This document shows positions 17,534 through 60,189 of a stretch of DNA of 64,000 nt, piece after piece; position 1 is the stretch's first letter, and each line of letters starts with the position of its first letter. Made by a program: the position numbers and the translations under genes. The stretch lies in IMG/VR virus record IMGVR_UViG_3300020477_000990, positions 186,001-250,000 of that record; one strand, 5' to 3'. The notes beneath the pieces were generated by a model. It saw only the letters and a program-made list of their open reading frames with translations. It was not told where the DNA came from and did no database searches.

Positions 17534-17929
17534 ATGAAAATTTACGAAATTAGCAATACAGATTTTTATTGTTTTGAGCCAGTATTAGGCGAAGCAAGTA
17601 GAAGACAAGGTGGAGCATTCCAAATATTTGGTAGAAGTCCAGGTAAATTTGGATCAGGTGCTAAAAAAGGAAAACTAACTAGAAAATTTAGATGTCCTAC
17701 AGGTCCACGTAAAGGACGTATTGTTGCTAAACCTGAAACTTGTAATGCACCGTTAAATGTTAGACAAAGTACTAGAATGAAAGGCACACGTGCCGCGAAA
17801 GCTGGAATACATGGTAAAAAATCAAGCTATACTAAAAAATATAGTCCAGCATCAATACGTACTAAAAAAATGAATAAAGGCTTAAAGAAATTGCGTGGTA
17901 GAGCAAGAAAAAGTATTAGAAGAAGGTAA
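17534..17929 (+). CDS. Basic prohead core protein (gp68-like)
   Basis: Very Lys/Arg-rich 131 aa between portal and protease. Confidence 0.55.
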   Translation: MKIYEISNTDFYCFEPVLGEASRRQGGAFQIFGRSPGKFGSGAKKGKLTRKFRCPTGPRKGRIVAKPETCNAPLNVRQSTRMKGTRAAKAGIHGKKSSYTKKYSPASIRTKKMNKGLKKLRGRARKSIRRR

Positions 17930-17932
17930 ATA
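17927..17932 (+). promoter_or_regulatory. Late promoter core, leaderless
   Basis: TAAATA-5 nt-ATG(17938); overlaps upstream stop. Confidence 0.5.
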
Positions 17933-17937
17933 TTAAT

Positions 17938-18138
17938 ATGCGTTATAGAGAGTTAATTAAAGAGAATTATTTTCCAGCAGATGATCAATATCATCAAGCA
18001 ACTGTTAACGATAGTCGTAAGACTAGATTAACTTTAGTTCATTTAAATAAGTTGCGTAAAGTACGTGAAATGCGTAAAGCAGATAAAGAAAAAAACAGCG
18101 AATTTGTAGCTACAATGTATGCTCCAGTAATGCAATAG
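17938..18138 (+). CDS. Small head-module hypothetical protein
   Basis: 66 aa, starts MRYRELIKE. Confidence 0.6.
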   Translation: MRYRELIKENYFPADDQYHQATVNDSRKTRLTLVHLNKLRKVREMRKADKEKNSEFVATMYAPVMQ

Positions 18139-18162
18139 GCCAAATAAAGCATATTTTAATAT

Positions 18163-18195
18163 AAAATAGGTTCAAAAATGGCTCAAAATAGGCTT
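18163..18195 (+). repeat. Three imperfect tandem 11-nt repeats
   Basis: AAAATAGGTTC / AAAAATGGCTC / AAAATAGGCTT. Confidence 0.7.
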
Positions 18196-18296
18196 CTTTA
18201 CCTTAAATTTCCTATAAATCTGTTAAATAATATATACGATGGGTATCTTATAGGTATCTAAACTATTCACGTGAATAAGATTTAGGAGTATATATT

Positions 18297-19301: not shown

Positions 19302-19338
19302 GGTGTAAGGAAGTTAGAAGATTAGGAGATCGTCAAAT

Positions 19339-19968: not shown

Positions 19969-19979
19969 GAGAACGACTC

Positions 19980-21092: not shown

Positions 21093-21093
21093 A

Positions 21094-30986: not shown

Positions 30987-31015
30987 TTGACAAACTCATT
31001 ATAATATTATACTAT
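30987..31015 (+). promoter_or_regulatory. sigma70-like promoter, near-leaderless
   Basis: TTGACA-17-TACTAT-7-ATG. Confidence 0.6.
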
Positions 31016-31022
31016 ATTAACT

Positions 31023-31283
31023 ATGATTGAAGTTACTTTAGATATAGATAAAATTTCCAAACGAGATGAATATATAGGACAATCAACAGGTACTAGTGTT
31101 GAGGGCGGAGCTCTTAATGCCAACTATAGAGAAGTTGATGCAGTAGCCAGAGTAGCAAACTTTATGGGTATGGTAGGTTATAAGTATGAAAAAGATTGGC
31201 ATTGGGAAGATGCTGGTTGTGATGAATTAATACTTAAAGTAAAAGACGAAGAAATAGCTACACAATTAAAGTTAAGGTGGTAA
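31023..31283 (+). CDS. Hypothetical protein
   Basis: 86-aa ORF behind promoter, co-operonic with kinase. Confidence 0.6.
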   Translation: MIEVTLDIDKISKRDEYIGQSTGTSVEGGALNANYREVDAVARVANFMGMVGYKYEKDWHWEDAGCDELILKVKDEEIATQLKLRW

Positions 31284-31953: not shown

Positions 31954-32303
31954 TCTGGCATTAAATCACCTTGTCTCCATTTAAATTGATCAGTACTTAA
32001 TAAACGTTGACAATTAGCACATATAGTTTTTAGATTATCCCAGCTACTATTTTTTAAATTACCGTCAATATGAAACACATCCATTTGTGCAGAGTGTTTA
32101 GCTTTATACCCACACTTTTCACATATAGATTTTTTCTTATAGCCACTACTTTGCCAAGATGCAGTACCACCAATACCTTTACCTTTGCCTAGGCGTATAC
32201 ATTTATCACACATTTTTCTATAGTAAGTCTTATCACCTTTTTTATAATTAAAGGCGGCTGGTCTAGACTTACATTTAACACATAATTGACGTAATTCGTT
32301 CAT
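31950..32303 (-). CDS. Zinc-finger/HNH-like protein
   Basis: Four CxxC pairs; 'HIDG.L.N....NL.TIC.NC'; TAAATA-5-ATG at 32309-32314. Confidence 0.7.
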   Translation of the reverse strand: MNELRQLCVKCKSRPAAFNYKKGDKTYYRKMCDKCIRLGKGKGIGGTASWQSSGYKKKSICEKCGYKAKHSAQMDVFHIDGNLKNSSWDNLKTICANCQRLLSTDQFKWRQGDLMPD

Positions 32304-32444
32304 ACTACTATTTACTGCCCTTTTAAAGGGAATTTTATTGGTGTATAAACCCCTTGTTTTACACCTGGTTCGAATAAATATTACTAACAGAATACGGCAA
32401 ATTCAATACTTTATTGAAGCAAAAGAGTTTAAGGAGAGATTATT

Positions 32445-38343: not shown

Positions 38344-38362
38344 CATCTCAATAAATACTAAT

Positions 38363-39616
38363 ATGACAACAAATGTAAACTGGCAGATTAATAATTCTGT
38401 GCATATTCATCCTGACAAATTAGTAAAAATTCAGTTTGAGCCAACGAGTTATTGTAATTTAAGATGTCCAGGATGTTCAAGAACTGATGAGTATACAGGG
38501 TTAGCAAAAAAAGATGTAATAAAATATCAACAACATATTCCAATGTCATTAATTAAGCCTATATTTTCTAATTTACCAAATTTAAAAGAAGTTAAAATGG
38601 ATGGTGATATAGGAGATGCAATGATGCATCCACATCTAGATAAAATTTGTGAAATGCTTATAGAAATGTATCCTAACATTTATATTCAAATTAATACTAA
38701 TGGAACTCCTGGGAAAGATAGTGTTTTTACAAAATTGTTAAGAATGAAAAATGTTATGTTTGTTTTAGGAATAGATGGATTAGAAGATACAAACCATTTA
38801 CATCGTGTAGGAGCAAACTGGAAAATAATTAAAAGGCGTCTTAAGTTAATTAAAAACATTGCTCCAGATCGTCATAAATGGAGATGGCTTGATTTTAAAC
38901 ATACTAGGCATCAGTTAGATGAAGCATTAGAGGTAGCAAAGTATTATCGAATAAGAAATCTTGAAGTTGGTGTACCTTATTCAGGGTCTGATGGAATGAT
39001 GCAAGAAGTTATAAAAGAAAGACAAGAAGGTATAAGAGACAGTAAAGGTCGAAAAGAAAAGAAAGAAGAAAAATTTACACCAGAACCTTATGAATTACCC
39101 AACATACACCAACACATAATAGAAGAAAAATTATTAAAAAAAGATGAATTGTTTAGTTGTCCATGGCAGGGTGCAAAGTTAATACAAGTTATGAGTACTG
39201 GTCAAATCTGGCCTTGCTGTTGGTCATCACAAATGCAAATAAGTACAATGAAATTTACAGCTGATGAAATAGTTAGTGAATATTATTTAGAAGATAATAT
39301 GAGGTATTTGCAGGTAGCTATGACTGATTGGTATAGTAAAATAAGTACTAATTGGGTAAAAGAAATAACAGTTACACCTAGTTATACTTTACGTGATGTA
39401 TTATTAGGAAAGTCATACAGAAAATTAGCAATGCTTTTAAAACCACAAAAAGAAAAGTATAATTTAAGTTATTGTAATATAACGTGTGGGAAATTTACCG
39501 AAGTGGAGAGGAATTCATCTAAAGGAGATAATTTATCTTCTGGGGTTGGTATAGCTCTTAAAAAGCAAATTTTAATTGACCCTTCAGGTCCAATTAATAT
39601 ACATAAAGGTTCGTAA
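38363..39616 (+). CDS. Radical SAM protein with SPASM/twitch-like C-terminus
   Basis: CNLRCPGC (CxxxCxxC), 'INTNG', 'GIDG', 'CPW...G.IWPCC...C..TC'; TAAATA-5-ATG at 38352. Confidence 0.88.
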   Translation: MTTNVNWQINNSVHIHPDKLVKIQFEPTSYCNLRCPGCSRTDEYTGLAKKDVIKYQQHIPMSLIKPIFSNLPNLKEVKMDGDIGDAMMHPHLDKICEMLIEMYPNIYIQINTNGTPGKDSVFTKLLRMKNVMFVLGIDGLEDTNHLHRVGANWKIIKRRLKLIKNIAPDRHKWRWLDFKHTRHQLDEALEVAKYYRIRNLEVGVPYSGSDGMMQEVIKERQEGIRDSKGRKEKKEEKFTPEPYELPNIHQHIIEEKLLKKDELFSCPWQGAKLIQVMSTGQIWPCCWSSQMQISTMKFTADEIVSEYYLEDNMRYLQVAMTDWYSKISTNWVKEITVTPSYTLRDVLLGKSYRKLAMLLKPQKEKYNLSYCNITCGKFTEVERNSSKGDNLSSGVGIALKKQILIDPSGPINIHKGS

Positions 39617-39691
39617 ATAGTGTATATATTGGTGTCTGTGTCCTATTTTAAGGTAGGCTACAATAAGGTTTAGAGGTTAAATAGTAGTGTT

Positions 39692-40129
39692 ATGCCAAAG
39701 TTTCAATCAGGTAATTATACGTTAAAAAATCCAACAAAATATGTTGGCCAAACAGTTCCAAGATATCGTTCTGGGTGGGAATTTTCTTTTATGAAGTTTT
39801 GTGATGAACATCCTAATATAATTGCTTGGTCCAGTGAGCCAATTAAAATACCATATCGTAATCCTTTTACTGGAAAATGGACGGTATATGTTCCAGACTT
39901 TTTAGTAACATATCTTAATAGAAGAGGTAGACGTTTTAGTGAACTAATAGAAGTTAAACCACGTGCAGAAACAATTTTTGAAGCGGCTAAAAATGCAAAA
40001 CATCGTGCCACTATTGTTCTTAATAGAGCTAAATGGAAAGCGGCAGGTGAATGGTCTAAAAGAAAAGGAATACGTTTTCGTATTTTAAATGAAGATTCTA
40101 TATATAAAATGAAGCCAAAAGGTAGATAA
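39692..40129 (+). CDS. gp4: Head completion nuclease (TnsA-like)
   Basis: 'YRSGWE..FMKFCD', 'WSSEP..IPY', 'YVPDF', 'IEVKP', 'N.AKW.AA'. Confidence 0.88.
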   Translation: MPKFQSGNYTLKNPTKYVGQTVPRYRSGWEFSFMKFCDEHPNIIAWSSEPIKIPYRNPFTGKWTVYVPDFLVTYLNRRGRRFSELIEVKPRAETIFEAAKNAKHRATIVLNRAKWKAAGEWSKRKGIRFRILNEDSIYKMKPKGR

Positions 40130-42100: not shown

Positions 42101-42117
42101 TAATATTAAATAATTGT

Positions 42118-42366
42118 ATGCTTATTCGTGATCTAAGAATAACAACTATTAAAGTTTATTATTGGATGCCAGATTATATAAACATCCTACAATTATTCAT
42201 GTGGCAATTTGATGACTTGCCACCACGTTTTCCAAAAGCACATAAGTTTTTAAATCATTGGCATAAAAATATAGATGCAATTATTAAAGACATTTATTTA
42301 GGCCATTCCGGAAAATATAGACAAGTAGAATTTAATCCTATTGATGATATTTTTAATCTTCATTAA
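42118..42366 (+). CDS. usg: Usg-family protein
   Basis: 'TT..V.Y.MPD...LQ.F.WQ..D..P.FP....FL..W...I' Usg pattern; TAAATA-5-ATG at 42107. Confidence 0.75.
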   Translation: MLIRDLRITTIKVYYWMPDYINILQLFMWQFDDLPPRFPKAHKFLNHWHKNIDAIIKDIYLGHSGKYRQVEFNPIDDIFNLH

Positions 42367-42395
42367 GTACGCATATAATTCTGATAAATATAATT

Positions 42396-43991
42396 ATGTC
42401 AAGAAGTAAAGTATTAGAAGGCAATTTAATTAAAAAAGCATACGCCAAAACAAAGTATACAGCAAAGCAAATAAGAGAATTAAAAAGTTGTGCTGATTCT
42501 GAAAACGGTTATATGTATTGGATGAAAAAGTATATGTGGATACAACATCCAACAAAAGGTCGTATGAAATTTAAACCATATAAGTTTCAAGAAGAATTAT
42601 TAGAAGCATACAATGGTTATAGATTTAGTATTGCCATGTGTGCAAGGCAAACAGGTAAAACAACCTGTGCGGCCGGATATTTATTATGGTATGCAATGTT
42701 TCATCCTGATACTTTAATTTTAATTGCGGCACACAAATATCAAGGTGCCCAAGATATTATGCAACGTGTTAGATTTGCATATGAAGAATGTCCGGATTAT
42801 ATTAGATGTGGGGTTACAAGTTATAATAAAGGATCAATGGATTTTGATAATGGATCAAGAATTATAGCACAAACAACTACAGAAACAACAGGACGTGGTA
42901 TGTCTATTTCAATGATATACATGGATGAGTTTGCGTTTGTTGAACCACAAAATAAAGCAAGAGAATTTTGGACTTCTTTATCTCCAACTTTGTCAACAGG
43001 TGGTAAATGTGTAATTACATCTACACCAAATAATGATGATGATTTGTTTGCTCAACTTTGGCGTGGTGCAAATAAATTGCAAGATGAATATGGTAATCCT
43101 GCTGAAGTAGGGCTTAATGGTTTTAAGCCAACATTTGTTCATTGGAGCCAACATCCTGAACGTGATGAAGATTGGGCTAAAGAAGAAAGACAACGTATTG
43201 GTGAAGAAAGATTTAGACGTGAGCATGAATGTGAGTTTATTGCATTTGATGAAACATTAATTGATGGATTAAAATTAATTACATTACAAGGAACGCAACC
43301 ACAAGTTAAACATGGACAAGTTCGTTGGTATGATAAAGTTAAAAAAGGTAGTAGTTATGTTATTGGACTAGATCCTTGTTTAGGAACGGGCGGTGATTAT
43401 GCCGCAATACAAGTTTTTAGTTTACCAGATTTTAAACAAGTTGCAGAATGGCAACACAATAAAACACCAATACAAGGACAAGTAAGAATAATGCATAGTA
43501 TATTAAAAGAAATAGATGCAAAATTACGTGAGCTAGGTACACCACAACCTGAAATATATTGGACAGTAGAAAATAATACATTAGGTGAAGCGGCAATTGT
43601 TACTATTGATGAAATGGGAGAAGATAAATTTCCAGGATACTTTTTACACGAACCACGTAAAGGTGGACAGCAAAGAAGAGTACGTAAAGGATATAATACT
43701 ACTCATAAATCAAAAGTTACTGCTTGTTCAAAACTTAAAGCATGGATAGAAACAGATAAAATTACAGTATATTCAAAACCATTAATACGAGAATTAAAAG
43801 TTTATGTTGCTAGAGGAAATAGTTTTCAAGCCAAGTCTGGTGAAAATGATGATTTAGTAGCCGCATTATTATTAGTAATTCGAATGACAGACTTTTTAAC
43901 AAAGTATGATGCTACAATGGAAGAGTCTTTAGGAGCCACACTTGAAGACGATGATGAATATAGAGATCCACCTCCAATAATGATTGGATAG
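42396..43991 (+). CDS. gp17: Terminase large subunit
   Basis: Walker A ARQTGKTT, Walker B YMDEFAF, 'ITSTPN', nuclease 'GLDP..G.G.DY', 'DDLV'; TAAATA-5-ATG at 42385. Confidence 0.96.
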   Translation: MSRSKVLEGNLIKKAYAKTKYTAKQIRELKSCADSENGYMYWMKKYMWIQHPTKGRMKFKPYKFQEELLEAYNGYRFSIAMCARQTGKTTCAAGYLLWYAMFHPDTLILIAAHKYQGAQDIMQRVRFAYEECPDYIRCGVTSYNKGSMDFDNGSRIIAQTTTETTGRGMSISMIYMDEFAFVEPQNKAREFWTSLSPTLSTGGKCVITSTPNNDDDLFAQLWRGANKLQDEYGNPAEVGLNGFKPTFVHWSQHPERDEDWAKEERQRIGEERFRREHECEFIAFDETLIDGLKLITLQGTQPQVKHGQVRWYDKVKKGSSYVIGLDPCLGTGGDYAAIQVFSLPDFKQVAEWQHNKTPIQGQVRIMHSILKEIDAKLRELGTPQPEIYWTVENNTLGEAAIVTIDEMGEDKFPGYFLHEPRKGGQQRRVRKGYNTTHKSKVTACSKLKAWIETDKITVYSKPLIRELKVYVARGNSFQAKSGENDDLVAALLLVIRMTDFLTKYDATMEESLGATLEDDDEYRDPPPIMIG

Positions 43992-44602: not shown

Positions 44603-44620
44603 TAAAGGATAAATATTAGT

Positions 44621-46807
44621 ATGGCAGTTAATTATAGTACAGTTTCTGATAAAGTTTTTAAAGTTATTAAAGGTAGTGGGCATGAAGTAAAGATGTATGA
44701 CTCAACTACTGGTGATGAAACAGTTGATCCATCAAAATCACGTTATTTTTACGTAAAAAATCCAAATTTTATGGTTAATATTGATGAAGAAACTGGAGAA
44801 ATTAAGTTCCACGAAGGGTCAAATGATAATGTGGCTACTAATTTAAAAAGTATTATAAATAACATAAAGCATTTAGCAAAAGGTTATATGCTTGATTTTG
44901 ACCATAGGCAATTTGGTAAAGAATTAAAACCAAAGAATTATGCTTGGAGAGTTGAGCAAAATAAAGGTACACAAATGGCAGACGTTACAACAGAAGGTTA
45001 TACACCGTTACAAGGATCAACAAAAACAAGTGAACAAAAACTTGAAGGTGTTAAAGTTATTGTAAGACACAATAAAGCAGTTGACGAAACTAGCAGAGGT
45101 GCTAGATCAAGAAATATACAAGGTATATTTGTTGAAACATCAGAAGGTGAAAGATTTAAATATCCGCACATTCATTTAAATGGTGCTAGAGCAATGGCAC
45201 GTCACGTACACGCAGGTGGTAAACCACATGATGAAGTAGGTGAAGCAATTGTTGAATTATCAGACACATTAGCAAAATTAAAAGAAGTTACAAAATACGC
45301 AAGACGTTTTAGCCAAGTACAAGAACAAGCGGCAGATATTTTACCATTAGTAGATAGCAAAATTGCTAGTGTTAAAAATCAAATTCATAAATTAACAACT
45401 GCAAGTGGATACACTTCATTTGTTGAAGGATATAAAAAAGCAGAATCAAAAGAACATAGTATTGAATCATTAGAAGATTTAAAAACTAAATTTACTGTTA
45501 CAAAATTTGATGAAAAAATTGGAGAGGTTCTTCCATTATTACAATCAATAATGGATGAAGCAAAAGCAGAACAAGACAATTCTACAGAAGCAATGATGCA
45601 ACGAATTGCACAAAAATTAAAAACTGGCGAACCAGTTGAATTAATGGCACCAGCCAAGGACGAGTACGCGATCGATAAAGTGGGGAGCTTTAAAGATAAT
45701 GCGAGTGCAATTTCATATAAATTAGCAGACATGGCAGGTAAAATTAAAGATGATGAAATGAGTGTATTCCTTTCAAGACTTTCAGATAAAGTTGGTCATA
45801 TGCATAGAAGTAAATATGAACCACAACCAACAAGACAAGAAATGGAATTAGCAAAACAAATAGTTTCTTTGTCTAAAATGAAAGATGTAACACCAAATGA
45901 AGATTTAGTTCCAGACACAGTTAAAGAGTTAGAAGAGTCAGTAGAAGACTTTGGTACAGATGCTTCATTTATAGAAGCAGACCCGGCAGTAAAAAGAGAT
46001 GATACTGTAGATAGAGCTGTTAAAAATGTTATGTCATATGTTGGTAAAGATGTTAATCCAAAAATGAGTTACCATAATTGGTTAAAAAAAGTTAAAGGTA
46101 TCGAAAGAGGTGCTAGAGGAATTAGTGGTAATCAACACGCAGAATTTTCAAAAGAGTTTAGAGCATATAAAGGTGAATCAGCTAATGAAGATGGAATAAC
46201 TCAAGCTGATTTAGATTCAGAAAGATTTGCTGAATTGCATGATTATGAAGAATATAAAGATGCAGTATTAGATGATATTAAAACAAATCCGCATTATGCA
46301 AAAATGTCAAGAGAACAAGTTATTGCAGATTTAAGAAAAGAAGCTGATAGTATTGGATATGCTGATGTTTCAGATGGTGATAGACGTCCAGAAGAACCAA
46401 CTTGGTTAACTAAAATTGCAGATGAGTTAGAAAGTGAACGACAAGAACCATCATTAAATGATCTAGTAAAACAAGATGCAGAATCAAAAGATGAAGATAC
46501 TACAGAAGCAAGTGGATATGAAGGACAAAATGAAGCACACGCACATCAAGTTTCATTTGATGGTGATTGGGATCAAGACAGAGGTATAAGTGATAAGGAT
46601 TGTAAAGAAGTTGAATTTGCACTTGCTAAAGTTGGAATTAAATCACAATGTGAACCAGATGAAATGAGACAAGGTGGAGTAATTATCCACACTATGGCTG
46701 ATAGAGATGCTACAGTTGATGCTTTAGATAAAGCAGGAATGAATTTAGACGAAACTTCTGAAGAATCAGAAGAAGTAAATAGAATCAAAGACCTAGCTGG
46801 TCTTTAA
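44621..46807 (+). CDS. Large putative internal/core virion protein
   Basis: TAAATA-5-ATG at 44610; multiple xxE-[ASG] sites; C-terminal RIKDLAGL. Confidence 0.6.
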   Translation: MAVNYSTVSDKVFKVIKGSGHEVKMYDSTTGDETVDPSKSRYFYVKNPNFMVNIDEETGEIKFHEGSNDNVATNLKSIINNIKHLAKGYMLDFDHRQFGKELKPKNYAWRVEQNKGTQMADVTTEGYTPLQGSTKTSEQKLEGVKVIVRHNKAVDETSRGARSRNIQGIFVETSEGERFKYPHIHLNGARAMARHVHAGGKPHDEVGEAIVELSDTLAKLKEVTKYARRFSQVQEQAADILPLVDSKIASVKNQIHKLTTASGYTSFVEGYKKAESKEHSIESLEDLKTKFTVTKFDEKIGEVLPLLQSIMDEAKAEQDNSTEAMMQRIAQKLKTGEPVELMAPAKDEYAIDKVGSFKDNASAISYKLADMAGKIKDDEMSVFLSRLSDKVGHMHRSKYEPQPTRQEMELAKQIVSLSKMKDVTPNEDLVPDTVKELEESVEDFGTDASFIEADPAVKRDDTVDRAVKNVMSYVGKDVNPKMSYHNWLKKVKGIERGARGISGNQHAEFSKEFRAYKGESANEDGITQADLDSERFAELHDYEEYKDAVLDDIKTNPHYAKMSREQVIADLRKEADSIGYADVSDGDRRPEEPTWLTKIADELESERQEPSLNDLVKQDAESKDEDTTEASGYEGQNEAHAHQVSFDGDWDQDRGISDKDCKEVEFALAKVGIKSQCEPDEMRQGGVIIHTMADRDATVDALDKAGMNLDETSEESEEVNRIKDLAGL

Positions 46808-46874: not shown

Positions 46875-46903
46875 TTGACAAATTGAAAAATAATAAATAT
46901 ACT
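46875..46903 (+). promoter_or_regulatory. Overlapping early and late promoters for gp32
   Basis: TTGACA-17-TATACT with TAAATA embedded at 46894-46899. Confidence 0.8.
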
Positions 46904-46936
46904 AGTAGATAATGTTTATAGAAACATTATTTACAG

Positions 46937-46990
46937 AGGCTAACATAGGCAATTATAGGCTAATATTTACAAAAGGAGGCAATTATGGCT
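46937..46990 (+). repeat. 10-nt phased AGGC(T/A)A repeats in gp32 leader
   Basis: AGGC at 46937, 46947, 46957, 46977 (last inside the SD). Confidence 0.8.
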
Positions 46991-50022: not shown

Positions 50023-50218
50023 GTGGACCACCATAGTGTACTGAACGTACTTTTTTACCCCTTAAAGATTTTCCTTTGTATTTTTTATCGGTTTCTCTAG
50101 CACGATGACCCTGTGCTTTACAACTAGATTCATCAGAAGCACCCAATTTTTTGTTACTTCTGCATACAGAACCGGGTACTGCACCCTTCCATTCACCAAT
50201 AATATCAATAACTTTCAT
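50006..50218 (-). CDS. Small basic late protein (possible head-internal)
   Basis: Start moved to ATG 50218 (TAAATA-5-ATG, 50224-50229); MKVIDIIGE N-terminus. Confidence 0.6.
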   Translation of the reverse strand: MKVIDIIGEWKGAVPGSVCRSNKKLGASDESSCKAQGHRARETDKKYKGKSLRGKKVRSVHYGGPLKDYS

Positions 50219-50242
50219 ACATTTATTTATGCTAAATTCCAG

Positions 50243-50270
50243 TTGACAAAGCAACTAAATATGTTATAGT
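50243..50270 (+). promoter_or_regulatory. sigma70-like promoter, leaderless
   Basis: TTGACA-16-TATAGT with TGn, 5 nt to ATG 50276. Confidence 0.7.
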
Positions 50271-50275
50271 AAGAT

Positions 50276-50890
50276 ATGCGATTAATAACAGTTATATTAA
50301 TAGTTGTAATAACTCTATTACCAAGTACTACAGTTGGTAATGGTATTAAAAAAGTAGACGTATTTTCAGTACAAAATAATGAAGATTTTGTGCTAAAAAT
50401 ATTTTCTTGTGTAAAAACCCTATATACAGAATTTCCGGAAAAATATCCATTAGAAAAACAAATACCATTTGATTTAATTGTAGCTATGGCGGCATATGAG
50501 TCAGCTTGGGGTAAAAGTAGATTTGCATTTGAAGGTAATAATTTATTTGGTATTAGGACTTGGGATCCATTAATTCCTCAAATGAAAGCTAAACAGAAAC
50601 CAAATGCTCCATGGGGAGTAAGAAAATATGAAACATATTGTACTTGTATAGTAGATTATATTCAAATTTTAAATAATCATCCTGCATATGAAGAATTTAG
50701 AACAGAAAGATCAATTGAGCTTGAAACATACGGATATACAAATGCAACTAATTTAGCACAATTCCTTGTAGCTTGGTCTGAACTTGGTGACCAATATACA
50801 AATAGATTAAGAGAAATTATTGTTTTAATTCATAAGCAAGGATATTATCAAGGTCTACCGGTTGATAATAAAGGCCGGATTATTAAATAA
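50276..50890 (+). CDS. Glucosaminidase (GH73/Bax-like) peptidoglycan hydrolase with N-terminal signal/anchor
   Basis: 'AAYESAWGKSRFA..GNNLFGI', 'LN.HPAY..FR'; hydrophobic N-terminus. Confidence 0.8.
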   Translation: MRLITVILIVVITLLPSTTVGNGIKKVDVFSVQNNEDFVLKIFSCVKTLYTEFPEKYPLEKQIPFDLIVAMAAYESAWGKSRFAFEGNNLFGIRTWDPLIPQMKAKQKPNAPWGVRKYETYCTCIVDYIQILNNHPAYEEFRTERSIELETYGYTNATNLAQFLVAWSELGDQYTNRLREIIVLIHKQGYYQGLPVDNKGRIIK

Positions 50891-50891
50891 G

Positions 50892-50920
50892 TTGCAATTC
50901 AATATTAAATCAGTTATTAT
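50892..50920 (+). promoter_or_regulatory. sigma70-like promoter, leaderless
   Basis: TTGCAA-17-TATTAT-6-ATG. Confidence 0.6.
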
Positions 50921-50926
50921 ATAATT

Positions 50927-52381
50927 ATGTCTAAAGTTACGAAATTAATTATTAAAGATGAAGTGAATGTAAGATTTGAAGGCCTAGATGTTATAACTAG
51001 ACGTAAAATTTCTGATAAGCTAAAATTCTTTTTACCGTATGCATATCATTTACCTGCTTATAAGTTAGGAAGATGGGATGGTAATATACGATTTTGTGAT
51101 ATTGGAGGAAGAACATATTTAAATTTACTTGATAAAATTTTACCAATAATTGAAGATCAAGAGTATGATGTGCAAATTGAAGATAATAGACAGCCACATG
51201 ATTTTCAATTTCAGTTAATAGATGAAAGTTTACATTTTAGTAAAAATTGGGGAGCAAAACATCCATTGGCAGGACAGCCAATTGTTTTAAGAGATTATCA
51301 AGTAAAAGCAATTAATAAATTTTTACAAGAGCCACAATGTTTACAAGAAATTGCCACAGGTGCAGGAAAAACATTAATTACAGCAACGTTATCTCAATTA
51401 GTGCAACCATATGGAAGATCAATTGTAATTGTTCCAAATAAATCATTAGTATCGCAAACAGAAGAAGATTATAAAACACTTGGATTAGATGTTGGTGTTT
51501 ATTATGGTGAAAGAAAAGAATTTGATAAAAAACATACAATTTGTACTTGGCAAAGTCTTAATGTATTATTAAAGAAAACAAAAAAATATGAAGCTGAAGT
51601 ATCTATAGGAGATTTTTTGCAAGATGTTGTATGTGTTATGGTTGATGAAGTACATCAGGCTAAAGCAGATGTTCTTAAAACATTATTAACAGGACCTTTT
51701 GCTAATGTTCCAATACGTTGGGGACTTACAGGTACAATACCTAAAGAAGATTATGAAATGGCATCATTAAAAGCAAGTTTAGGTGAAGTTATTAGTAAAC
51801 TATCAGCAAGTGAATTACAAGAAAAAGGTGTATTAGCAAAATGTCATGTAAATATTATTCAAACACAAGATACTCAAGCATTTACAAATTATGCAAATGA
51901 GCAAACACATTTAGTTACTAATCATGAACGTTTAGAATTTATTTCAGATTTAATTGATAAAATTAGAGCAGAAGGAAATACATTAATTTTAGTTGATAGA
52001 ATTAAATCAGGACAGTTGCTAGAAGAATTAGTTGTTGGATCGGTATTTGTTCAAGGTAGAACAAAGATGGAAGATAGAGAAGAAGAATATGATAGTATTG
52101 CAACAGAGCAACATAAAGTTATTATTGCTACATATGGTGTAGCGGCAGTAGGAATTAATTTACCAAGAATATTTAATTTGGTATTATTAGAACCAGGTAA
52201 ATCTTTTGTAAGGGTTATACAGTCAATTGGTAGAGGTATACGTAAAGCAGAAGATAAAGATCATGTAGAAATATGGGATATAACGTCGACGTGTAAGTTT
52301 TCAAAACGACATTTGACTACAAGAAAGAAATTTTATAAAGAAGCAAATTATCCTTTTACAATAGAAAAGGTAACAATATGA
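50927..52381 (+). CDS. uvsW: SF2 DNA helicase
   Basis: 'LRDYQ', ATGAGKT, DEVH, 'GLTGT', 'QSIGRG.R'. Confidence 0.92.
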   Translation: MSKVTKLIIKDEVNVRFEGLDVITRRKISDKLKFFLPYAYHLPAYKLGRWDGNIRFCDIGGRTYLNLLDKILPIIEDQEYDVQIEDNRQPHDFQFQLIDESLHFSKNWGAKHPLAGQPIVLRDYQVKAINKFLQEPQCLQEIATGAGKTLITATLSQLVQPYGRSIVIVPNKSLVSQTEEDYKTLGLDVGVYYGERKEFDKKHTICTWQSLNVLLKKTKKYEAEVSIGDFLQDVVCVMVDEVHQAKADVLKTLLTGPFANVPIRWGLTGTIPKEDYEMASLKASLGEVISKLSASELQEKGVLAKCHVNIIQTQDTQAFTNYANEQTHLVTNHERLEFISDLIDKIRAEGNTLILVDRIKSGQLLEELVVGSVFVQGRTKMEDREEEYDSIATEQHKVIIATYGVAAVGINLPRIFNLVLLEPGKSFVRVIQSIGRGIRKAEDKDHVEIWDITSTCKFSKRHLTTRKKFYKEANYPFTIEKVTI

Positions 52382-54579: not shown

Positions 54580-55144
54580 AACAGACGTAGATATTGATGT
54601 AAAAGATAGAGATAAAGTTTTAGAAAAGCTAAAACATATACCAGCAAGTATTATACAAAATGGTGAAATTAAAAAGCATAATACTGGAGTATACTTTACT
54701 GACATACCTACACATCCGTTTACTAATTCAGCAAATATAGATTACAAGGAAGCAGAAGACAGAGGTTATTTTAAATTAGATTTTTTAAATGTAGGTGTTT
54801 ATGAAAAAGTAAAAGACGAAAAGCATTTAATTGAATTAATTAATCAAGAACCAAATTGGTCGTTATTAGACCATAAAGAAATTGTAGAGGGGTTATTTCA
54901 TATTCATAATCATTTTGATATTGTTAGTAAATTAAAACCAAAGTCAGTTGAAGAATTGGCGGCAGTTTTGGCAATAATAAGACCAGCTAAGAGACATTTG
55001 CTTAATGTTAGCTGGCCAGAAATTCATTCCAAAGTTTGGGTAAAGCCAGAGGATAACACATATTACTTTAAGAAAAGTCATGCTGTAGGATATGCGTTAG
55101 CCATTTGCGTACAATTAAATCTATTATCTAATGCTATTGTTTAA
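54572..55144 (+). CDS. Miniature DNA polymerase III alpha (DnaE)-like protein
   Basis: DVDID, KHNTGVYF, GYFKLDFLN, FKKSHAVGYA match successive DnaE motifs. Confidence 0.8.
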   Translation: MIKTDVDIDVKDRDKVLEKLKHIPASIIQNGEIKKHNTGVYFTDIPTHPFTNSANIDYKEAEDRGYFKLDFLNVGVYEKVKDEKHLIELINQEPNWSLLDHKEIVEGLFHIHNHFDIVSKLKPKSVEELAAVLAIIRPAKRHLLNVSWPEIHSKVWVKPEDNTYYFKKSHAVGYALAICVQLNLLSNAIV

Positions 55145-55512
55145 TCGTCAGTCTTTTTCACTAATTGAATTTGACGCCTTTTAATACGTTTTCTTATAAT
55201 ATTGTTTAAGCTAGTTACAGGGCCAAATACTAATTTAACATCTTTAGTAGTAAATGTTTTTAAGCAGTTTCCAAATTTAGTAAAATCACCAGCTAAAAAT
55301 ATATTAATAGGAATTACACGGTTTGATTCCCACCACCATACATCACCTAGACGTAAAAATTCACGTTTTTGATCTTCATTATCTAGCACATCATACACGT
55401 ACATACTGGTAACAAAATCATCTTGATTTTGCATAATGCCAACATATTCGTTAGTACCATGCTTTATGCATGATAAGAAAGGAAATTTATCTGTAAGTTC
55501 GTTATAATCCAT
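55141..55512 (-). CDS. Hypothetical protein
   Basis: 123 aa with own promoter. Confidence 0.7.
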   Translation of the reverse strand: MDYNELTDKFPFLSCIKHGTNEYVGIMQNQDDFVTSMYVYDVLDNEDQKREFLRLGDVWWWESNRVIPINIFLAGDFTKFGNCLKTFTTKDVKLVFGPVTSLNNIIRKRIKRRQIQLVKKTDD

Positions 55513-55518
55513 CGCTAT

Positions 55519-55547
55519 ATTATACTTGCTTTAATTTTATTTAGCAA
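55519..55547 (-). promoter_or_regulatory. sigma70-like promoter, leaderless
   Basis: TTGCTA-17-TATAAT-6-ATG. Confidence 0.7.
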
Positions 55548-55581
55548 CATAAATATACATATAATTTGAAGGAAATTTACT

Positions 55582-57533: not shown

Positions 57534-57562
57534 TTGACTTTTTGTTAATTTTCTTATATTAT
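57534..57562 (+). promoter_or_regulatory. sigma70-like promoter, leaderless
   Basis: TTGACT-17-TATTAT-6-ATG 57569. Confidence 0.7.
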
Positions 57563-57568
57563 ATAAGC

Positions 57569-58558
57569 ATGAATCTTCAAACAACAATATTAACACATTT
57601 ACGTGGAAAAAGAAAAATGACTCCAAGTGGGTGGACAACGGTTAATTGTCCAATGTGTGTGACTAACGGGCAACCAAGGCCAGACACTAGATCACGAGGA
57701 GGCTTCAGTTTTGTTGATGGAATGGTTTACCATTGCTTCAATTGTGGATTCAGTACTAGTTTTAAATCAGGTAGATTATTTGGTAAGAAACTAGTAGGAC
57801 TATTGCGTGGAATTGGTATACCTGATAATGAAGTTAAAAAACTTCAATTGTTAGCAATACGTGAAAAAGAAACTTTCACGCAAGAAGTCCATAAAGAAAA
57901 ACCAAAGGTATCGTGGAGAGAAATACAGTTACCAAAAGGATCTAAACCTTTAATCGAGATTATTAAAAATGATAATCCACCAGATGATGCTGTGTGGGTA
58001 TACAAGCACATTATTGATAGAGGTTTAGATCATTATGGTGATTTTTATTGGAGCAATGATACATATTTAGATTTGAACAGAAGGTTTATCGTACCGTTTT
58101 ATTATCAAGGTAGTACAGTTGGTTATACATCAAGAATTATTGATAATAATCCAGATAAGCCAAAATATTTTACAAATTCACAACCAAATTATATGTATAA
58201 TTTAGATGTATTAAGTAAAAAAAGAAAATATTTAATTGTTGTAGAAGGTGTACTAGATGCTTTAAGTATTGATGGATTAGCAGTATTACATAATAAACTA
58301 AACCAACAGCAAATAGATATTATAAATGAATTTGAAGGTGAAATTATAGTTTGTCCTGATAGAGATAGAGCAGGAACAACATTAATTGATCAAGCAGTTG
58401 AAAATAATTGGGCTGTCAGTTTTCCGCCATGGCATAAAAAAATAAAAGATTGTGCTGATGCTGTAAAAAATTATGGTCAATTGTTTACTATAAAAAGCAT
58501 CATAGAAAATCGAGTAAATAATAAAGTAAAGATTAATGTATTGAGAAAGATCGCATAG
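57569..58558 (+). CDS. DNA primase (gp61/DnaG-like)
   Basis: CPMC...HCFNC zinc domain; TOPRIM 'VVEGVLDAL', 'PDRDRAG'; start moved to 57569. Confidence 0.9.
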   Translation: MNLQTTILTHLRGKRKMTPSGWTTVNCPMCVTNGQPRPDTRSRGGFSFVDGMVYHCFNCGFSTSFKSGRLFGKKLVGLLRGIGIPDNEVKKLQLLAIREKETFTQEVHKEKPKVSWREIQLPKGSKPLIEIIKNDNPPDDAVWVYKHIIDRGLDHYGDFYWSNDTYLDLNRRFIVPFYYQGSTVGYTSRIIDNNPDKPKYFTNSQPNYMYNLDVLSKKRKYLIVVEGVLDALSIDGLAVLHNKLNQQQIDIINEFEGEIIVCPDRDRAGTTLIDQAVENNWAVSFPPWHKKIKDCADAVKNYGQLFTIKSIIENRVNNKVKINVLRKIA

Positions 58559-58571
58559 GAGAATAAAAAGA

Positions 58572-59183
58572 ATGGCGGATTTAGATAGAAAGAAAAAAGA
58601 AGATAAAGCAAGAGGGCCGACCCCATCTCCACAACCATTACAACCAGGAGTAATGATGTGGGAAGCTGGAATAATGTATTTTAGTGAACCATTTGATGCT
58701 AAAACAACGCAACCAGTTATTAACACAATTATCGAAAAGAACTTATTGCCAAATTCACAAAGACCAAATGAACTTACGTTAGTAATTAATTCACCAGGTG
58801 GGCAAGTTCATTCAGCATTTGCTTTAATTGACACGATGAAAGGATCAGCTATTCCTGTAAAAACTGTAGGATTAGGTATGATAGCATCATGTGGATTATT
58901 AACATTTATGAGTGGAACAAAAGGACGTAGAGTGTTAACACCAAATACATCTATATTATCACATCAATATAGTTGGGGATCAGGCGGAAAAGAACACGAA
59001 TTATTTGCAAGAGTACGAGAATTTGAATTAAGCACAAAAAGAATGATTGAACATTACAAAAAATGTACAGGATTATCTGAAAAGAAAATTAGAGAGATAT
59101 TATTACCACCAGAGGACGTTTGGTTATCAGCCAAAGAAGCAGTCAAATATGGTATAGCAGATAAAATTGTAAAAACTTATTAA
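58572..59183 (+). CDS. clpP: ClpP-like serine protease
   Basis: 'INSPGG', 'IASCG' (Ser), 'SHQ' (His), 'EDVWLSA.EAV.YG..D' (Asp). Confidence 0.85.
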   Translation: MADLDRKKKEDKARGPTPSPQPLQPGVMMWEAGIMYFSEPFDAKTTQPVINTIIEKNLLPNSQRPNELTLVINSPGGQVHSAFALIDTMKGSAIPVKTVGLGMIASCGLLTFMSGTKGRRVLTPNTSILSHQYSWGSGGKEHELFARVREFELSTKRMIEHYKKCTGLSEKKIREILLPPEDVWLSAKEAVKYGIADKIVKTY

Positions 59184-59365
59184 TGAGTCCAAGAGAAAAA
59201 ATATTAATAGTAATTTTTTTATTTGTATTAGGAATATCAAACTTGTTTTTAGCTTATCAGATAATTGATTTGCAGGTTACTGTAACTGAATTGTTTGAAA
59301 TGGTTTATAAGCATGATGCTTTTTTACGAATGATAGAAATGTTTAGTCCAGGAATGGAAATTTAA
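59183..59365 (+). CDS. Small single-pass membrane protein
   Basis: N-terminal hydrophobic helix; coupled to both neighbours. Confidence 0.55.
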   Translation: MSPREKILIVIFLFVLGISNLFLAYQIIDLQVTVTELFEMVYKHDAFLRMIEMFSPGMEI

Positions 59366-60012
59366 TGATTGTAGAATTAATAGATAAAATGGGATCTGAT
59401 CTAACGGTAGTAAATGCCGCTAGAGTTAGTTATGGTAAAAACAAAGAAGTATTTGATGCATCAGATGAAAAACTTATTAAGTTTTTAGCTTTGCATAATC
59501 ATTGGTCTCCATTTGCTCATTGTAGCCTACAATTTAGAATTAAAGCACCAATATTTGTTGCTAGGCAGTTAGTTAAGCATCAAGTAGGATTAAGTTGGAA
59601 TGAAATTAGTAGACGCTATGTTGATTTCCCACCTGAATTATATAGCCCAAAAGAATGGAGAGGCAGACCAAAAAATTCTAAACAAGGATCAGATGGCACA
59701 GTTGAATTTAATAAAAATGAACAACATATACTTGATACAACTATGGAACAATGTTTATTAATTTATAATAATATGATAGCAAAAGGTGTAGCACCAGAGC
59801 AGGCTAGAATGGTATTACCACAATCAATGATAACAGAATGGTATTGGACAGGAAGTTTATATGCGTTTGCTAGAGTTTGTGATTTAAGATGTGCAAGTGA
59901 TACACAAGAAGAAACTAGAATAATAGCAAATTCAATTGATAAATTTTGCAATGAGGAATTTCCATATAGTTGGAAATATTTAAGACTTGTAAAACAACAG
60001 GAAAGTGTGTAA
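59365..60012 (+). CDS. thyX: Flavin-dependent thymidylate synthase
   Basis: 'VNAARVSY', 'HWSPF', 'RQLVKH....NEISRRY', 'EQARMVLP', 'TQ.E.R'. Confidence 0.95.
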   Translation: MIVELIDKMGSDLTVVNAARVSYGKNKEVFDASDEKLIKFLALHNHWSPFAHCSLQFRIKAPIFVARQLVKHQVGLSWNEISRRYVDFPPELYSPKEWRGRPKNSKQGSDGTVEFNKNEQHILDTTMEQCLLIYNNMIAKGVAPEQARMVLPQSMITEWYWTGSLYAFARVCDLRCASDTQEETRIIANSIDKFCNEEFPYSWKYLRLVKQQESV

Positions 60013-60021
60013 TATATAACT

Positions 60022-60189
60022 ATGGGTATGGATATTAAAAGAGAATATAGTGCTGATAAACCAGAAGATATAAAAGCAAAAGAAGATGCAAAGAAAAAAA
60101 TGTGGAAAGAGTTTTTTGCAAAAGGTGGAAAAATTGAAAAGATTCCATATAAGGTAACAAAAGATCAATTGAAAAAAGGACAACTGTAA
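60022..60189 (+). CDS. 55-aa protein with SutA RNAP-binding-like motif (not in ORF track)
   Basis: MGMDIKREY...EFFAKGGKIEKIPY; TAATG overlap with helicase; TTGTAA-17-TAATAT-6-ATG. Confidence 0.65.
   Translation: MGMDIKREYSADKPEDIKAKEDAKKKMWKEFFAKGGKIEKIPYKVTKDQLKKGQL

What the first reader, a model, noticed from the sequence alone, without database searches (positions are those of the whole stretch)
17927..60024. Pervasive leaderless translation under both early and late promoters
Seen: TAAATA lies exactly 5 nt before ATG, with no SD, at 17938, 32303(-), 38363, 42118, 42396 (terminase), 44621 and 50218(-), and 8 nt before ATG at 6045(-) and 39692. A sigma70 -10 box lies 5-7 nt before ATG at 31023, 50276, 50927, 55512(-), 57569 and 60022. 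High-copy structural genes (scaffold, protease, sheath, tube, gp32) instead have strong GGAG SDs. Established: that spacing places the start of transcription at or next to the AUG. Inference: two translation classes, with leaderless mRNAs for lower-abundance enzymes, possibly insensitive to host MazF/anti-SD stress responses.
Basis: partly seen in the sequence, partly recalled or inferred. Interest (0 to 1): 0.6.

Follow-up and report, generated by a model that had tools for sequence, protein, structure and literature searches.

The report
Leaderless genes in a jumbo phage
In this 328-kb uncultured aquatic phage and its wild relatives, about one gene in six has its promoter set directly against the ATG, so the mRNA should begin at AUG with no ribosome-binding leader; this is a known but uncommon layout, conserved here gene by gene, and not yet confirmed by RNA 5'-end mapping.

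Summary
All 15 sites are as described. The spacing is strongly non-random. Genome-wide, TAAATA-N5-ATG occurs 30 times against about 10 at other spacings (p=3e-7). A sigma70-like -10 box ends exactly 6 nt before ATG 14 times against about 4 (p=6e-5). The excess applies to ATG only, not GTG or TTG.

TAAATA is the core of a T4-type late promoter. The window encodes a gp55-like late sigma factor. The hexamer is the most avoided A/T hexamer in coding DNA, on both strands. A T-purine step sits at a fixed distance downstream, whether or not a leader follows.

Each promoter class peaks at the spacing that puts +1 on the A of ATG. The layout is conserved per gene across wild relatives: terminase in 47 of 52 contexts at 55-93% identity, g44621 in 28 of 30 down to 27% identity, and also primase and helicase. 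SSB, UvsX, capsid, sheath and tube genes keep strong SDs. Cultured relatives (PA5oct, 121Q, a Vibrio phage, Phosso) and T4 lack the excess.

No transcription start data exist, because the public RNA runs are contigs only. The "enzymes versus structural" split is only approximate. The MazF idea has no support. I rate it a new variant of a known kind; Thermus phages are the closest precedent.

The parts
6150..6956 (+). Gene for a gp55-like late sigma factor (268 aa). It is the presumed reader of the TAAATA motif.
   Evidence: phrog_12791 'sigma factor for late transcription', E 2.9e-81; phrog_234, E 7.7e-23. T4 gp55 matches this ORF by tblastn, E 8.7e-5.
17927..17940 (+). GTAAATA-N5-ATG in front of a 66-aa ORF (17938-18138). 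The TAA of the motif is also the stop codon of the upstream ORF (17534-17929).
   Evidence: phrog_13986, function unknown
32301..32314 (-). GTAAATA-N5-ATG in front of an HNH endonuclease-like ORF (31950-32303, minus strand).
   Evidence: PHROG HNH endonuclease families, E about 1e-6
38352..38365 (+). ATAAATA-N5-ATG in front of a radical SAM gene (38363-39616).
   Evidence: Pfam PF04055, 39.2 bits; distant homologues in L012/L013 also have TAAATA at N5
39678..39694 (+). TTAAATA-N8-ATG in front of the head-closure gene (39692-40129). The predicted leader is 3 nt, with +1 = G at 39689.
   Evidence: phrog_218, E 2.5e-39; close relatives have N5, N6 or N8
42107..42120 (+). TTAAATA-N5-ATG in front of an 82-aa ORF (42118-42366).
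   Evidence: N5 kept in 9 of 9 distinct relatives
42385..42398 (+). ATAAATA-N5-ATG in front of the large terminase gene (42396-43991).
   Evidence: 47 of 52 distinct upstream contexts in relatives (55-93% aa identity) have TAA[AG]TA at N4-N6, often directly after a terminator hairpin
44610..44623 (+). ATAAATA-N5-ATG in front of a 728-aa virion structural protein gene (44621-46807).
   Evidence: 28 of 30 relatives are flush, down to 27% aa identity
50216..50229 (-). ATAAATA-N5-ATG in front of a 70-aa ORF (50006-50218, minus strand). It diverges from the 50276 promoter within a 57-bp gap.
   Evidence: CTAAATA/ATAAATA-N5-ATG kept in 12 relatives
6043..6059 (-). ATAAATA-N8-ATG in front of a virion structural protein gene (5335-6045, minus strand).
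   Evidence: phrog_12050, E 2.5e-46
30987..31025 (+). TTGACA-N17-TACTAT-N7-ATG in front of an 86-aa ORF (31023-31283).
   Evidence: conservation not examined
50243..50278 (+). TTGACA-N16-(TG)TATAGT-N5-ATG in front of a 204-aa protein with an endolysin-like domain (50276-50890).
   Evidence: the promoter is kept at N5-7 in most relatives
50892..50929 (+). TTGCAA-N17-TATTAT-N6-ATG in front of the DNA helicase gene (50927-52381).
   Evidence: the same layout is kept in close relatives, and TTGACA-N16/17-TATAAT-N6-ATG is found in several at about 63% identity
55510..55547 (-). TTGCTA-N17-TATAAT-N6-ATG in front of a 123-aa ORF (55141-55512, minus strand).
   Evidence: relatives vary, with either a leader of 18-20 nt or a TAAATA flush to the ATG
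57534..57571 (+). TTGACT-N17-TATTAT-N6-ATG in front of the DNA primase gene (57569-58558).
   Evidence: -35/-10 at N6-7 is kept in relatives down to about 35% identity
59987..60024 (+). TTGTAA-N17-TAATAT-N6-ATG in front of a 55-aa ORF (60022-60189). This is the weakest site.
   Evidence: 8 of 12 matches. No family hit. Conservation was not examined. By sequence alone it is not distinguishable from chance.
15725..15769 (+). Comparator: the TATAAATA late motif, then a leader of about 18 nt with AAGGT, in front of the portal gene (15767-17485).
   Evidence: phrog_213, E 1e-113
46876..46987 (+). Comparator: TTGACA-N17-TATACT promoter, then a leader of about 75 nt with AGGC(T/A)A(A/T) repeats and an AGGAGG SD, in front of the gp32-like SSB gene (46985-48004).
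   Evidence: an SD is present in 34 of 34 relatives

Best explanation
The phage transcribes about a sixth of its genes as leaderless mRNAs, with a 5'UTR of 0-3 nt. These come from two promoter classes.

- Early genes use host-type sigma70 promoters of the form TTGACA-N16/17-(TGn)TATtAT. The -10 hexamer ends 6 nt (range 5-7) before ATG.
- Late genes use a T4-type promoter, (A/G)TAAATA-N4-T-R. It is read by the phage's gp55-like sigma factor (window 6150-6956). The motif ends 5 nt before ATG, and in a smaller set 8 nt before.

In both classes RNA polymerase should start on the A of ATG, or 3 nt upstream in the N8 set. Ribosomes would then initiate on a 5'-terminal AUG without a Shine-Dalgarno pairing.

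Which gene uses which mode is heritable. Terminase, a 728-aa virion protein, helicase, primase and many radical SAM genes are leaderless. Capsid, protease, sheath, tube, SSB and UvsX genes keep leaders with strong SDs.

Shown here: the motifs, the spacing peaks, the ATG exclusivity, the avoidance of TAAATA on both DNA strands, the sigma factor gene, and the conservation. Inferred: the position of +1 and the mode of translation.

My suggested rationale is inference only. A 5'-terminal AUG makes translation depend on the use of the gene's own promoter. Read-through transcripts would carry the same AUG internally without an SD. The layout also lets a promoter fill the whole intergenic gap.
For: 1. 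Spacing.
- TAAATA-N5-ATG occurs 30 times against 10.1, and RTAAATA 19 times against 3.7.
- The sigma70 -10 followed by ATG at N6 occurs 14 times against 3.9.
- TAAATA at d=5 is the top positional hexamer at gene starts.

2. The transcription start signature does not depend on the ATG.
- The 5th base after TAAATA is T in 17 of 17 N5 genes and 82% of N8 genes.
- The 6th base is a purine in 100% of N8 genes and 80% of genes with leaders of 10-60 nt.

3. The excess applies to ATG only. GTG is 5 against 3.4 and TTG is 9 against 10.2. In relatives, ATG is 194 against 24, GTG 6 against 8 and TTG 19 against 22. This fits the known need of leaderless mRNAs for a 5'-terminal AUG (Brock et al. 2008, cited in PMC5312081).

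4. TAAATA acts at the DNA level.
- It is the most depleted A/T hexamer in coding DNA. O/E is 0.50 on the sense strand and 0.56 on the antisense strand, while neighbouring words are 0.9-1.06.
- A gp55-like sigma factor is encoded.
- The same ATAAATA motif was predicted as the late promoter in the related phages CBB and GAP32 (PMC5259590).

5. Conservation.
- Terminase: 47 of 52 contexts are flush. In many, a terminator hairpin and T-run abut the motif.
- g44621: 28 of 30. g42118: 9 of 9.
- Primase and helicase keep the -35/-10/N6-7/ATG layout.
- SSB (34 of 34) and UvsX (24 of 28) always have an SD.
- In 160 related loci, 128 of 1408 distinct gene starts have TAAATA at N5.

6. Start codons are sound, and the N-termini align with homologues.

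7. Divergent pairs (50218/50276 and 55512/55582) leave no room for another promoter. Intergenic gaps before early-type flush genes have a median of 37.5 nt, about one promoter length.

8. In cultured PA5oct, gp262 has ATAAATA-N5-ATG with no SD, after a divergent neighbour. It is annotated as detected in virions by mass spectrometry.
Against: - No 5'-end data. The four marine metatranscriptome runs are short assembled contigs that cannot show starts.
- One contig of a related strain runs about 70 nt upstream of the 44621 ATG. Leadered (read-through) RNA, or contaminating DNA, therefore also exists.
- The +1 geometry of T4 late promoters is taken from established knowledge, not from a tool result. 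The reviews read here say only that the box sits at the -10 position.
- The host is unknown. Leaderless mRNAs are translated poorly in E. coli-type hosts.
- The counts are not fully independent. Nine of 43 late-type flush genes are radical SAM paralogues. The related loci were collected around genes already known to be flush.
- Permissive sigma70 matches are at chance level in this AT-rich DNA. Sites 60022 and 31023 therefore rest on spacing alone.
Confidence: 0.75

Rival explanations
1. The motifs are real promoters, but these genes are translated mainly from longer polycistronic transcripts. Initiation would be internal and SD-independent, or by reinitiation or coupling after the upstream gene. 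The promoter next to the ATG would serve mostly to transcribe downstream genes.
For: - 30 of 42 late-type flush genes have a same-strand gene upstream, often within 10-90 nt.
- At 17938 the motif's TAA is the upstream stop codon.
- About 140 other genes in the genome lack any SD and must already use coupling or SD-independent initiation.
- An RNA-library contig of a relative spans the region upstream of the 44621 ATG.
Against: - It does not explain why the spacing is fixed at exactly N5 or N6, at a different value for each promoter class.
- It does not explain why only ATG is enriched.
- In many relatives the terminase motif follows a terminator hairpin directly.
- 12 of 42 late-type flush genes have a divergent upstream neighbour, so read-through is impossible.
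Confidence: 0.14
2. Transcription starts a few bases off the A of ATG. The mRNAs would then have very short leaders, or begin inside the ATG, and the true start codon would lie downstream.
For: - The N8 class (12 genes) and occasional N4, N6 and N7 spacings show that the distance is not absolute.
- Start sites of bacterial RNA polymerase can vary by 1-2 nt.
Against: - The ATG and the residues after it align across homologues.
- No in-frame downstream start with an SD exists within 40 codons.
- The T-purine step lies at the same offset in all classes.
- Leaders of 1-3 nt would still be functionally leaderless.
Confidence: 0.07
3. The pattern is a by-product of AT-rich sequence or of wrongly chosen start codons.
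For: - The genome is 31.8% GC.
- Consensus promoter hits are at shuffle level.
- Unconditioned Markov shuffles give only z=2.5.
Against: - Conditional tests give p values of 1e-5 to 1e-8.
- The excess is absent for GTG and TTG.
- It is absent from equally AT-rich cultured relatives and from T4.
- It is conserved for the same genes at 27-60% protein identity while the flanks diverge.
Confidence: 0.02

Closest known systems
Phage T4 late transcription (gp55 sigma factor, TATAAATA box)
   Same: A gp55-like sigma factor is encoded. The core is a TAAATA-containing -10-type box with no conserved -35 element. An AT-rich segment follows it. The motif stands upstream of virion genes.
   Different: T4 late mRNAs carry leaders with SDs. 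T4 shows little or no clear excess of TAAATA-N5-ATG (10 against 5 in the control). The conserved core here is 7 bp, (A/G)TAAATA. No gp45 homologue was found with T4 gp45 as query, and gp33 was not sought.
Thermus phages YS40 and Lalka27a (most transcripts leaderless, early and late)
   Same: Leaderless mRNAs come from more than one temporal promoter class, with the A or G of the initiator codon at the 5' end (bioRxiv 10.64898/2026.04.20.719267).
   Different: This is a different phage lineage, with different promoters (TAGGGT-type late box) and a host phylum in which leaderless genes are common. There, most transcripts are leaderless. Here it is about 16% of genes, or roughly 25-45% of genes that sit next to a promoter, and strong SDs coexist. 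The Thermus cases are mapped experimentally; this one is not.
Rak2-like and PA5oct-like jumbo phages (CBB, GAP32, 121Q, PA5oct)
   Same: These are the nearest cultured relatives. PA5oct terminase is 56% identical. An ATAAATA late motif and a gp55-like sigma factor were predicted in CBB and GAP32 (PMC5259590). Sigma70-like early promoters are reported in PA5oct (PMC7318152). IF3 and/or bS21 genes are shared.
   Different: None has an excess of TAAATA-N5-ATG (PA5oct 15 against 12, 121Q 6 against 11). PA5oct terminase has an SD leader. Leaderless mRNAs are not mentioned in those papers.
T4 genes e, soc, 49 and I-TevI: translated only from transcripts that start at the late promoter
   Same: A late promoter stands directly in front of the coding sequence, so that only the gene's own late transcript is translatable (PMC3014915). 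Here too an HNH endonuclease gene (31950-32303) is among the flush genes.
   Different: In T4 the gate is an RNA hairpin that hides the SD in longer transcripts. Here there is no SD at all, and the gate, if it exists, would be the 5'-terminal position of the AUG. This is a suggestion and was not tested.
Lambda cI mRNA from pRM, and leaderless mRNAs of mycobacteria
   Same: Both have a 5'-terminal AUG and no SD (PMC10491246 and PMC4633059, listed).
   Different: One is a single regulatory gene and the other a host-wide feature of actinobacteria. Neither is a gene-specific programme under two phage promoter classes.

Membership tests
Leaderless mRNA | The primary transcript begins at the start codon, or within a few nt of it | not testable with these tools
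   Only assembled metatranscriptome contigs were available. The start is inferred from promoter geometry.
Leaderless mRNA | No Shine-Dalgarno sequence and no room for one | tested here: met
   The promoter element ends 5-8 nt before ATG at all 15 sites.
Leaderless mRNA | The start codon must be AUG | tested here: met
   The N5 excess applies to ATG only (30 against 10.1). GTG is 5 against 3.4 and TTG is 9 against 10.2. The same holds in 160 related loci.
Leaderless mRNA | The ORF is really translated from that ATG | tested here: inconclusive
   The N-termini align with homologues and no alternative start exists. PA5oct gp262 (ATAAATA-N5-ATG) is annotated as found in virions by MS. There is no proteomics for this phage.
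T4-type (gp55) late promoter | A phage-encoded gp55-family sigma factor | tested here: met
   Window 6150-6956: phrog_12791, E 2.9e-81; phrog_234, E 7.7e-23; T4 gp55 tblastn, E 8.7e-5.
T4-type (gp55) late promoter | A TATAAATA-like box at -10 with no conserved -35 element | tested here: met
   The core is (A/G)TAAATA. No base is conserved from -20 to -2 of the motif. The motif is avoided on both strands of coding DNA.
T4-type (gp55) late promoter | The gp33 co-activator and the gp45 sliding clamp as activator | tested here: inconclusive
   T4 gp45 found no match in the genome. gp33 was not searched. CBB also lacks detectable gp33 and gp45 (PMC5259590).
T4-type (gp55) late promoter | Late timing and dependence on replication | not testable with these tools
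   There is no time-course data. The motif precedes virion and packaging genes.
Sigma70 (host RNA polymerase) promoter | -35 TTGACA, a 16-18 bp spacer, and -10 TATAAT | tested here: met
   Five of six window sites have 3 or fewer mismatches of 12. Genome-wide, 26 genes have such a pair ending 5-7 nt before ATG. The layout is conserved for primase, helicase and 50276.
Thermus-phage type 'mostly leaderless' transcriptome | Most transcripts are leaderless | tested here: not met
   69 of 433 genes (16%) are flush. 42 late-type genes are flush against 52 with a leader.

The most novel reading that the evidence does not exclude
A widespread clade of uncultured marine and freshwater jumbo phages may have replaced the ribosome-binding leader with the promoter itself for a fixed set of genes, including terminase, helicase, primase and radical SAM enzymes. 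This would apply under both host sigma70 and phage gp55-type transcription. A 5'-terminal AUG would then act as a gate: a gene is translated only from transcripts started at its own promoter. That would be a structure-free counterpart of the hairpin gates of T4 genes e and I-TevI. It may operate together with the phage's own IF3 and N-terminally extended bS21.
Probability: 0.25. Interest if true: 0.75.

Novelty: new variant of a known kind. Interest (0 to 1): 0.6.

Why it matters
- **A new setting for a known mechanism.** Leaderless translation is well known in actinobacteria, Deinococcus-Thermus, archaea and a few phage genes. It has not been reported for phages with T4-type late transcription. 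The open-access search found no paper that combines "leaderless mRNA" with gp55 or T4-like phages.
- **Contrast with mapped jumbo phages.** The jumbo phages with mapped transcription starts show the opposite. phiKZ has no leaderless transcript, and AR9 has 5'UTRs of 26-491 nt.
- **A phylogenetically replicated data set.** If the reading is right, the same orthologue is found flush to its promoter in some relatives and with an SD leader in others. That can be used to ask what decides the choice of initiation mode.
- **Annotation.** RBS-based gene finders will place these starts badly.
- **Host inference.** The unknown hosts would have to translate 5'-terminal AUGs well.
- **Engineering.** The layout offers very compact promoter-ORF cassettes of about 35 bp.

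Tried and rejected
1. **RNA evidence.** Four marine metatranscriptome runs hold parts of the region, but only as Logan contigs of 150-650 nt inside genes. No start could be read.

2. **Unconditioned Markov shuffles.** These are misleading because TAAATA itself is depleted two-fold. I replaced them with spacing-conditional tests.

3. **A specific link to phage IF3 and bS21.**
- The genome encodes a full-length IF3 and an extended bS21 next to each other.
- The same genes occur in cultured relatives that lack the leaderless excess: the Vibrio phage and Phosso have both, 121Q has IF3, and PA5oct has bS21.
- I therefore claim no specific link.

4. **Host inference from the phage IF3.** This gave only two weak hits, at 33-40% identity, to Saccharibacteria MAGs. 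It is uninformative, and the host remains unknown.

5. **T4 gp45 as query.** No match in the genome.

6. **Promoter features in the T4 record, to check the +1 geometry.** None are annotated in the copy held.

7. **Generic sigma70 scan.** Hits are at chance level, so it is not usable as evidence.

8. **The PA5oct paper.** It reports only sigma70-like promoters and does not mention leaderless mRNAs.

The large protein searches, structure prediction and complex prediction were not needed and were not run.

Full report
**What the window is.**
- The window is bases 186001-250000 of a complete 328,149-bp virus record with direct terminal repeats and 31.8% GC.
- Its large terminase is about 56% identical to that of Pseudomonas jumbo phage PA5oct. 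It is 43-53% identical to those of Phosso, a Vibrio jumbo phage, Atu_ph07 and the Rak2/121Q group.
- There is no close cultured relative, and the host is unknown.
- Parts of the region occur in marine metatranscriptomes.

- TAAATA ends 5 nt before ATG at seven sites and 8 nt before at two.
- At six sites a -10-like hexamer ends 5-7 nt before ATG. Each of these also has a -35-like hexamer 16-17 bp upstream.
- Every ATG is the first usable start after a nearby in-frame stop, with two exceptions: 50218(-) and 57569 have an upstream TTG.
- No downstream in-frame start within 40 codons has an SD.

**The spacing is far from chance.**
- I called 433 genes in the whole genome, covering 93% of it.
- The commonest position-specific hexamer upstream of their starts is TAAATA at distance 5 (17 genes). 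Next among TAAATA positions is distance 8 (11 genes). Both stand ahead of any Shine-Dalgarno word.
- Without any gene calls, TAAATA-N5-ATG occurs 30 times against a mean of 10.1 at other spacings (p=3e-7).
- With the better-defined motif [AG]TAAATA the count is 19 against 3.7 (p=2e-8).
- Stringent -35/-10 pairs are followed by ATG at N6 14 times against 3.9 (p=6e-5).
- Plain Markov shuffles understate the effect (z=2.5). TAAATA is half as frequent in the real genome as in the shuffles.
- Permissive sigma70 matches are at chance level in this AT-rich DNA. Single weak sites such as 60022 therefore carry little weight alone.

**TAAATA is a promoter, not an mRNA signal.**
- The window encodes a gp55-family late sigma factor at 6150-6956.
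- Within coding DNA, TAAATA is the most depleted of all 64 A/T-only hexamers. By a maximal-order Markov expectation it is depleted equally on the sense strand (O/E 0.50) and the antisense strand (0.56). Overlapping and neighbouring words are at 0.9-1.06. Avoidance on both strands points to a DNA-level signal.
- Functional copies are preceded by A or G, whereas T is usual at copies away from gene starts, most of them inside genes. Nothing is conserved further upstream.
- The 5th base after the motif is T and the 6th is a purine. This holds in the N8 genes (82% and 100%) and in genes with leaders of 10-60 nt (53% and 80%, diluted by chance copies).
- Typical leadered examples in the window stand in front of the genes at 15767 (portal), 17534, 27341(-), 30231, 40795 and 61682. 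They read ATAAATA-N4-T-A followed by a leader of 12-20 nt with an SD.
- The same ATAAATA motif and a gp55-like factor were predicted for the related phages CBB and GAP32 (PMC5259590).

**Where +1 falls.**
- T4 late promoters place their box at the position of the bacterial -10 element (PMC2988020 and PMC7892883).
- From established knowledge, not from a tool result, the T4 box spans -13 to -6 and a sigma70 hexamer spans -12 to -7. The start is then the 6th and the 7th base after each, respectively.
- The two classes here peak at N5 and N6, exactly those values. The internally conserved T-purine step agrees.
- In all 17 N5 genes at a first-called gene start, the base before ATG is T.
- The excess applies to ATG only, in this genome and in 160 related loci. 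This fits the reliance of leaderless mRNAs on a 5'-terminal AUG (Brock et al. 2008, as cited in PMC5312081).

**Conservation.** I fetched 160 IMG/VR loci around homologues of the terminase and the helicase.

| Gene | Result in relatives |
|---|---|
| Terminase | 47 of 52 distinct upstream contexts (55-93% aa identity) have TAA[AG]TA at N4-N6, 37 of them at N5. Many follow a terminator hairpin and T-run directly. Four have an SD leader instead. |
| 728-aa virion protein (44621) | 28 of 30 flush, down to 27% identity |
| ORF 42118 | 9 of 9 at N5 |
| Primase | TTGAC(A/T)-N17-TAtAAT-N6/7-ATG kept down to about 35% identity |
| Helicase | Same layout in close relatives and in several at about 63% identity |
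| SSB | SD in 34 of 34 |
| UvsX | SD in 24 of 28 |
| 40160, 40795, 55512, 55582 | Switch between flush and leadered among relatives |

- Over all loci, 128 of 1408 distinct gene starts have TAAATA at N5. This figure is inflated, because the loci were chosen around genes already known to be flush.

**Where the habit is found.**
- Larger contigs of uncultured relatives show the excess: 85 matches against 33 for the reversed-pattern control.
- Cultured relatives and T4 do not: PA5oct 15 against 12, the Vibrio phage 3 against 3, Phosso 3 against 2, 121Q 6 against 11, and T4 10 against 5.
- PA5oct terminase has an SD leader.
- One PA5oct gene, gp262, has ATAAATA-N5-ATG after a divergent neighbour. 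It is annotated as detected in virions by mass spectrometry. Its orthologue in this window (55582) is leadered.

**How large the class is, and what it holds.**
- Genome-wide, 43 genes have TAAATA or TAAGTA ending 5-8 nt before ATG (22 at N5, 12 at N8).
- A further 26 genes have a sigma70-type pair ending 5-7 nt before ATG (19 at N6).
- Together these are 69 of 433 genes, or 16%.
- Late-type flush genes number 42, against 52 late-motif genes with leaders.
- About a quarter of stringent sigma70-type sites that lie near a gene start are flush.
- The gap before early-type flush genes has a median of 37.5 nt, about one promoter length.
- Flush genes in the window encode terminase, a head-closure protein, two virion proteins, an HNH endonuclease, a radical SAM enzyme, helicase, primase, an endolysin-domain protein and small unknown proteins.
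- Strong SDs precede the protease, major head protein, sheath, tube, SSB and UvsX genes. The portal gene has a leader with a weak SD.
"Low-copy enzymes versus high-copy structural proteins" is only a rough description of them.

**RNA data.** The only public RNA runs are assembled contigs of 150-650 nt lying inside genes. They show presence in RNA libraries, not transcript starts. One contig of a related strain extends about 70 nt upstream of the 44621 ATG, so longer RNA (or DNA carry-over) also exists.

**Relation to what is known.**
- The nearest precedent is in Thermus phages YS40 and Lalka27a, where most early and late transcripts are leaderless.
- The jumbo phages with mapped transcription starts show none. 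phiKZ has no leaderless transcript, and AR9 has 5'UTRs of 26-491 nt.
- The PA5oct paper reports only sigma70-like promoters.
- No paper in the searched library links leaderless mRNA with gp55 or T4-like phages.
- T4 does restrict translation of genes e, soc, 49 and I-TevI to transcripts started at a late promoter just upstream, by means of an RNA hairpin. A 5'-terminal AUG could achieve the same result without RNA structure. This is my suggestion and was not tested.
- Nothing here supports the MazF or anti-SD stress idea.

**Verdict.** The leaderless reading is well supported by sequence statistics and comparative evidence, but it is not shown at the RNA level. I rate it a new variant of a known kind.

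Noticed in passing
whole genome G000; in the window 38363-39616: The phage carries 22 matches to Pfam Radical_SAM (19 over the cut-off), plus one weaker paralogue. Some have a SPASM domain at the N-terminus. This is a very large expansion for a phage. Nine of these genes have a TAAATA motif flush to the ATG; the others lie inside operons.
   Followed up: partly
G000:C1:274793-275713 (about 25 kb beyond the window end; locus L165:1222-2142): Two adjacent genes encode a full-length translation initiation factor IF3 (IF3_N + IF3_C, 185 aa) and a ribosomal protein bS21 with a basic N-terminal extension of about 40 aa. The bS21 gene itself has TTGACA-N16-TATTAT-N6-ATG. Both gene families also occur in cultured relatives that lack the leaderless excess, so I claim no specific link.
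   Followed up: partly
window 46876-46987: The gp32-like SSB gene has a sigma70-like promoter and a leader of about 75 nt. The leader holds a small hairpin and three AGGC(T/A)A(A/T) repeats before an AGGAGG SD. Similar AGGC-repeat leaders are conserved in relatives. They could be an autoregulatory operator or standby sites.
   Followed up: no
loci L018-L080, upstream of the terminase gene: In many distant relatives, a GC-rich terminator hairpin and T-run are followed directly by (G/A)TAAATA-N5-ATG. Terminator, promoter and start codon fit within about 45 bp.
   Followed up: partly
window 50219-50275 and 55513-55581: Two divergent gene pairs have short gaps (57 and 69 bp) filled by back-to-back promoters. 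At 50219-50275 a late-type motif faces a sigma70-type promoter, and both are conserved in relatives.
   Followed up: partly
window 31950-32303 (-): An HNH endonuclease-like ORF has a late motif flush to its ATG. This recalls the late-promoter-gated homing endonucleases of T4.
   Followed up: no
loci L016, L053, L073 and others: A variant box, TAAGTA, at N4-N5 replaces TAAATA in some relatives, upstream of terminase and of the homologue of 40160.
   Followed up: partly
locus L165:560-1225 and 2111-3230: Next to IF3 and bS21 lie three ORFs that look by eye like a ClpX-like ATPase C-terminal part, a NadE-like NAD synthetase and a SpeD-like decarboxylase. I named them from the translations only and did not run them against any family library.
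   Followed up: no
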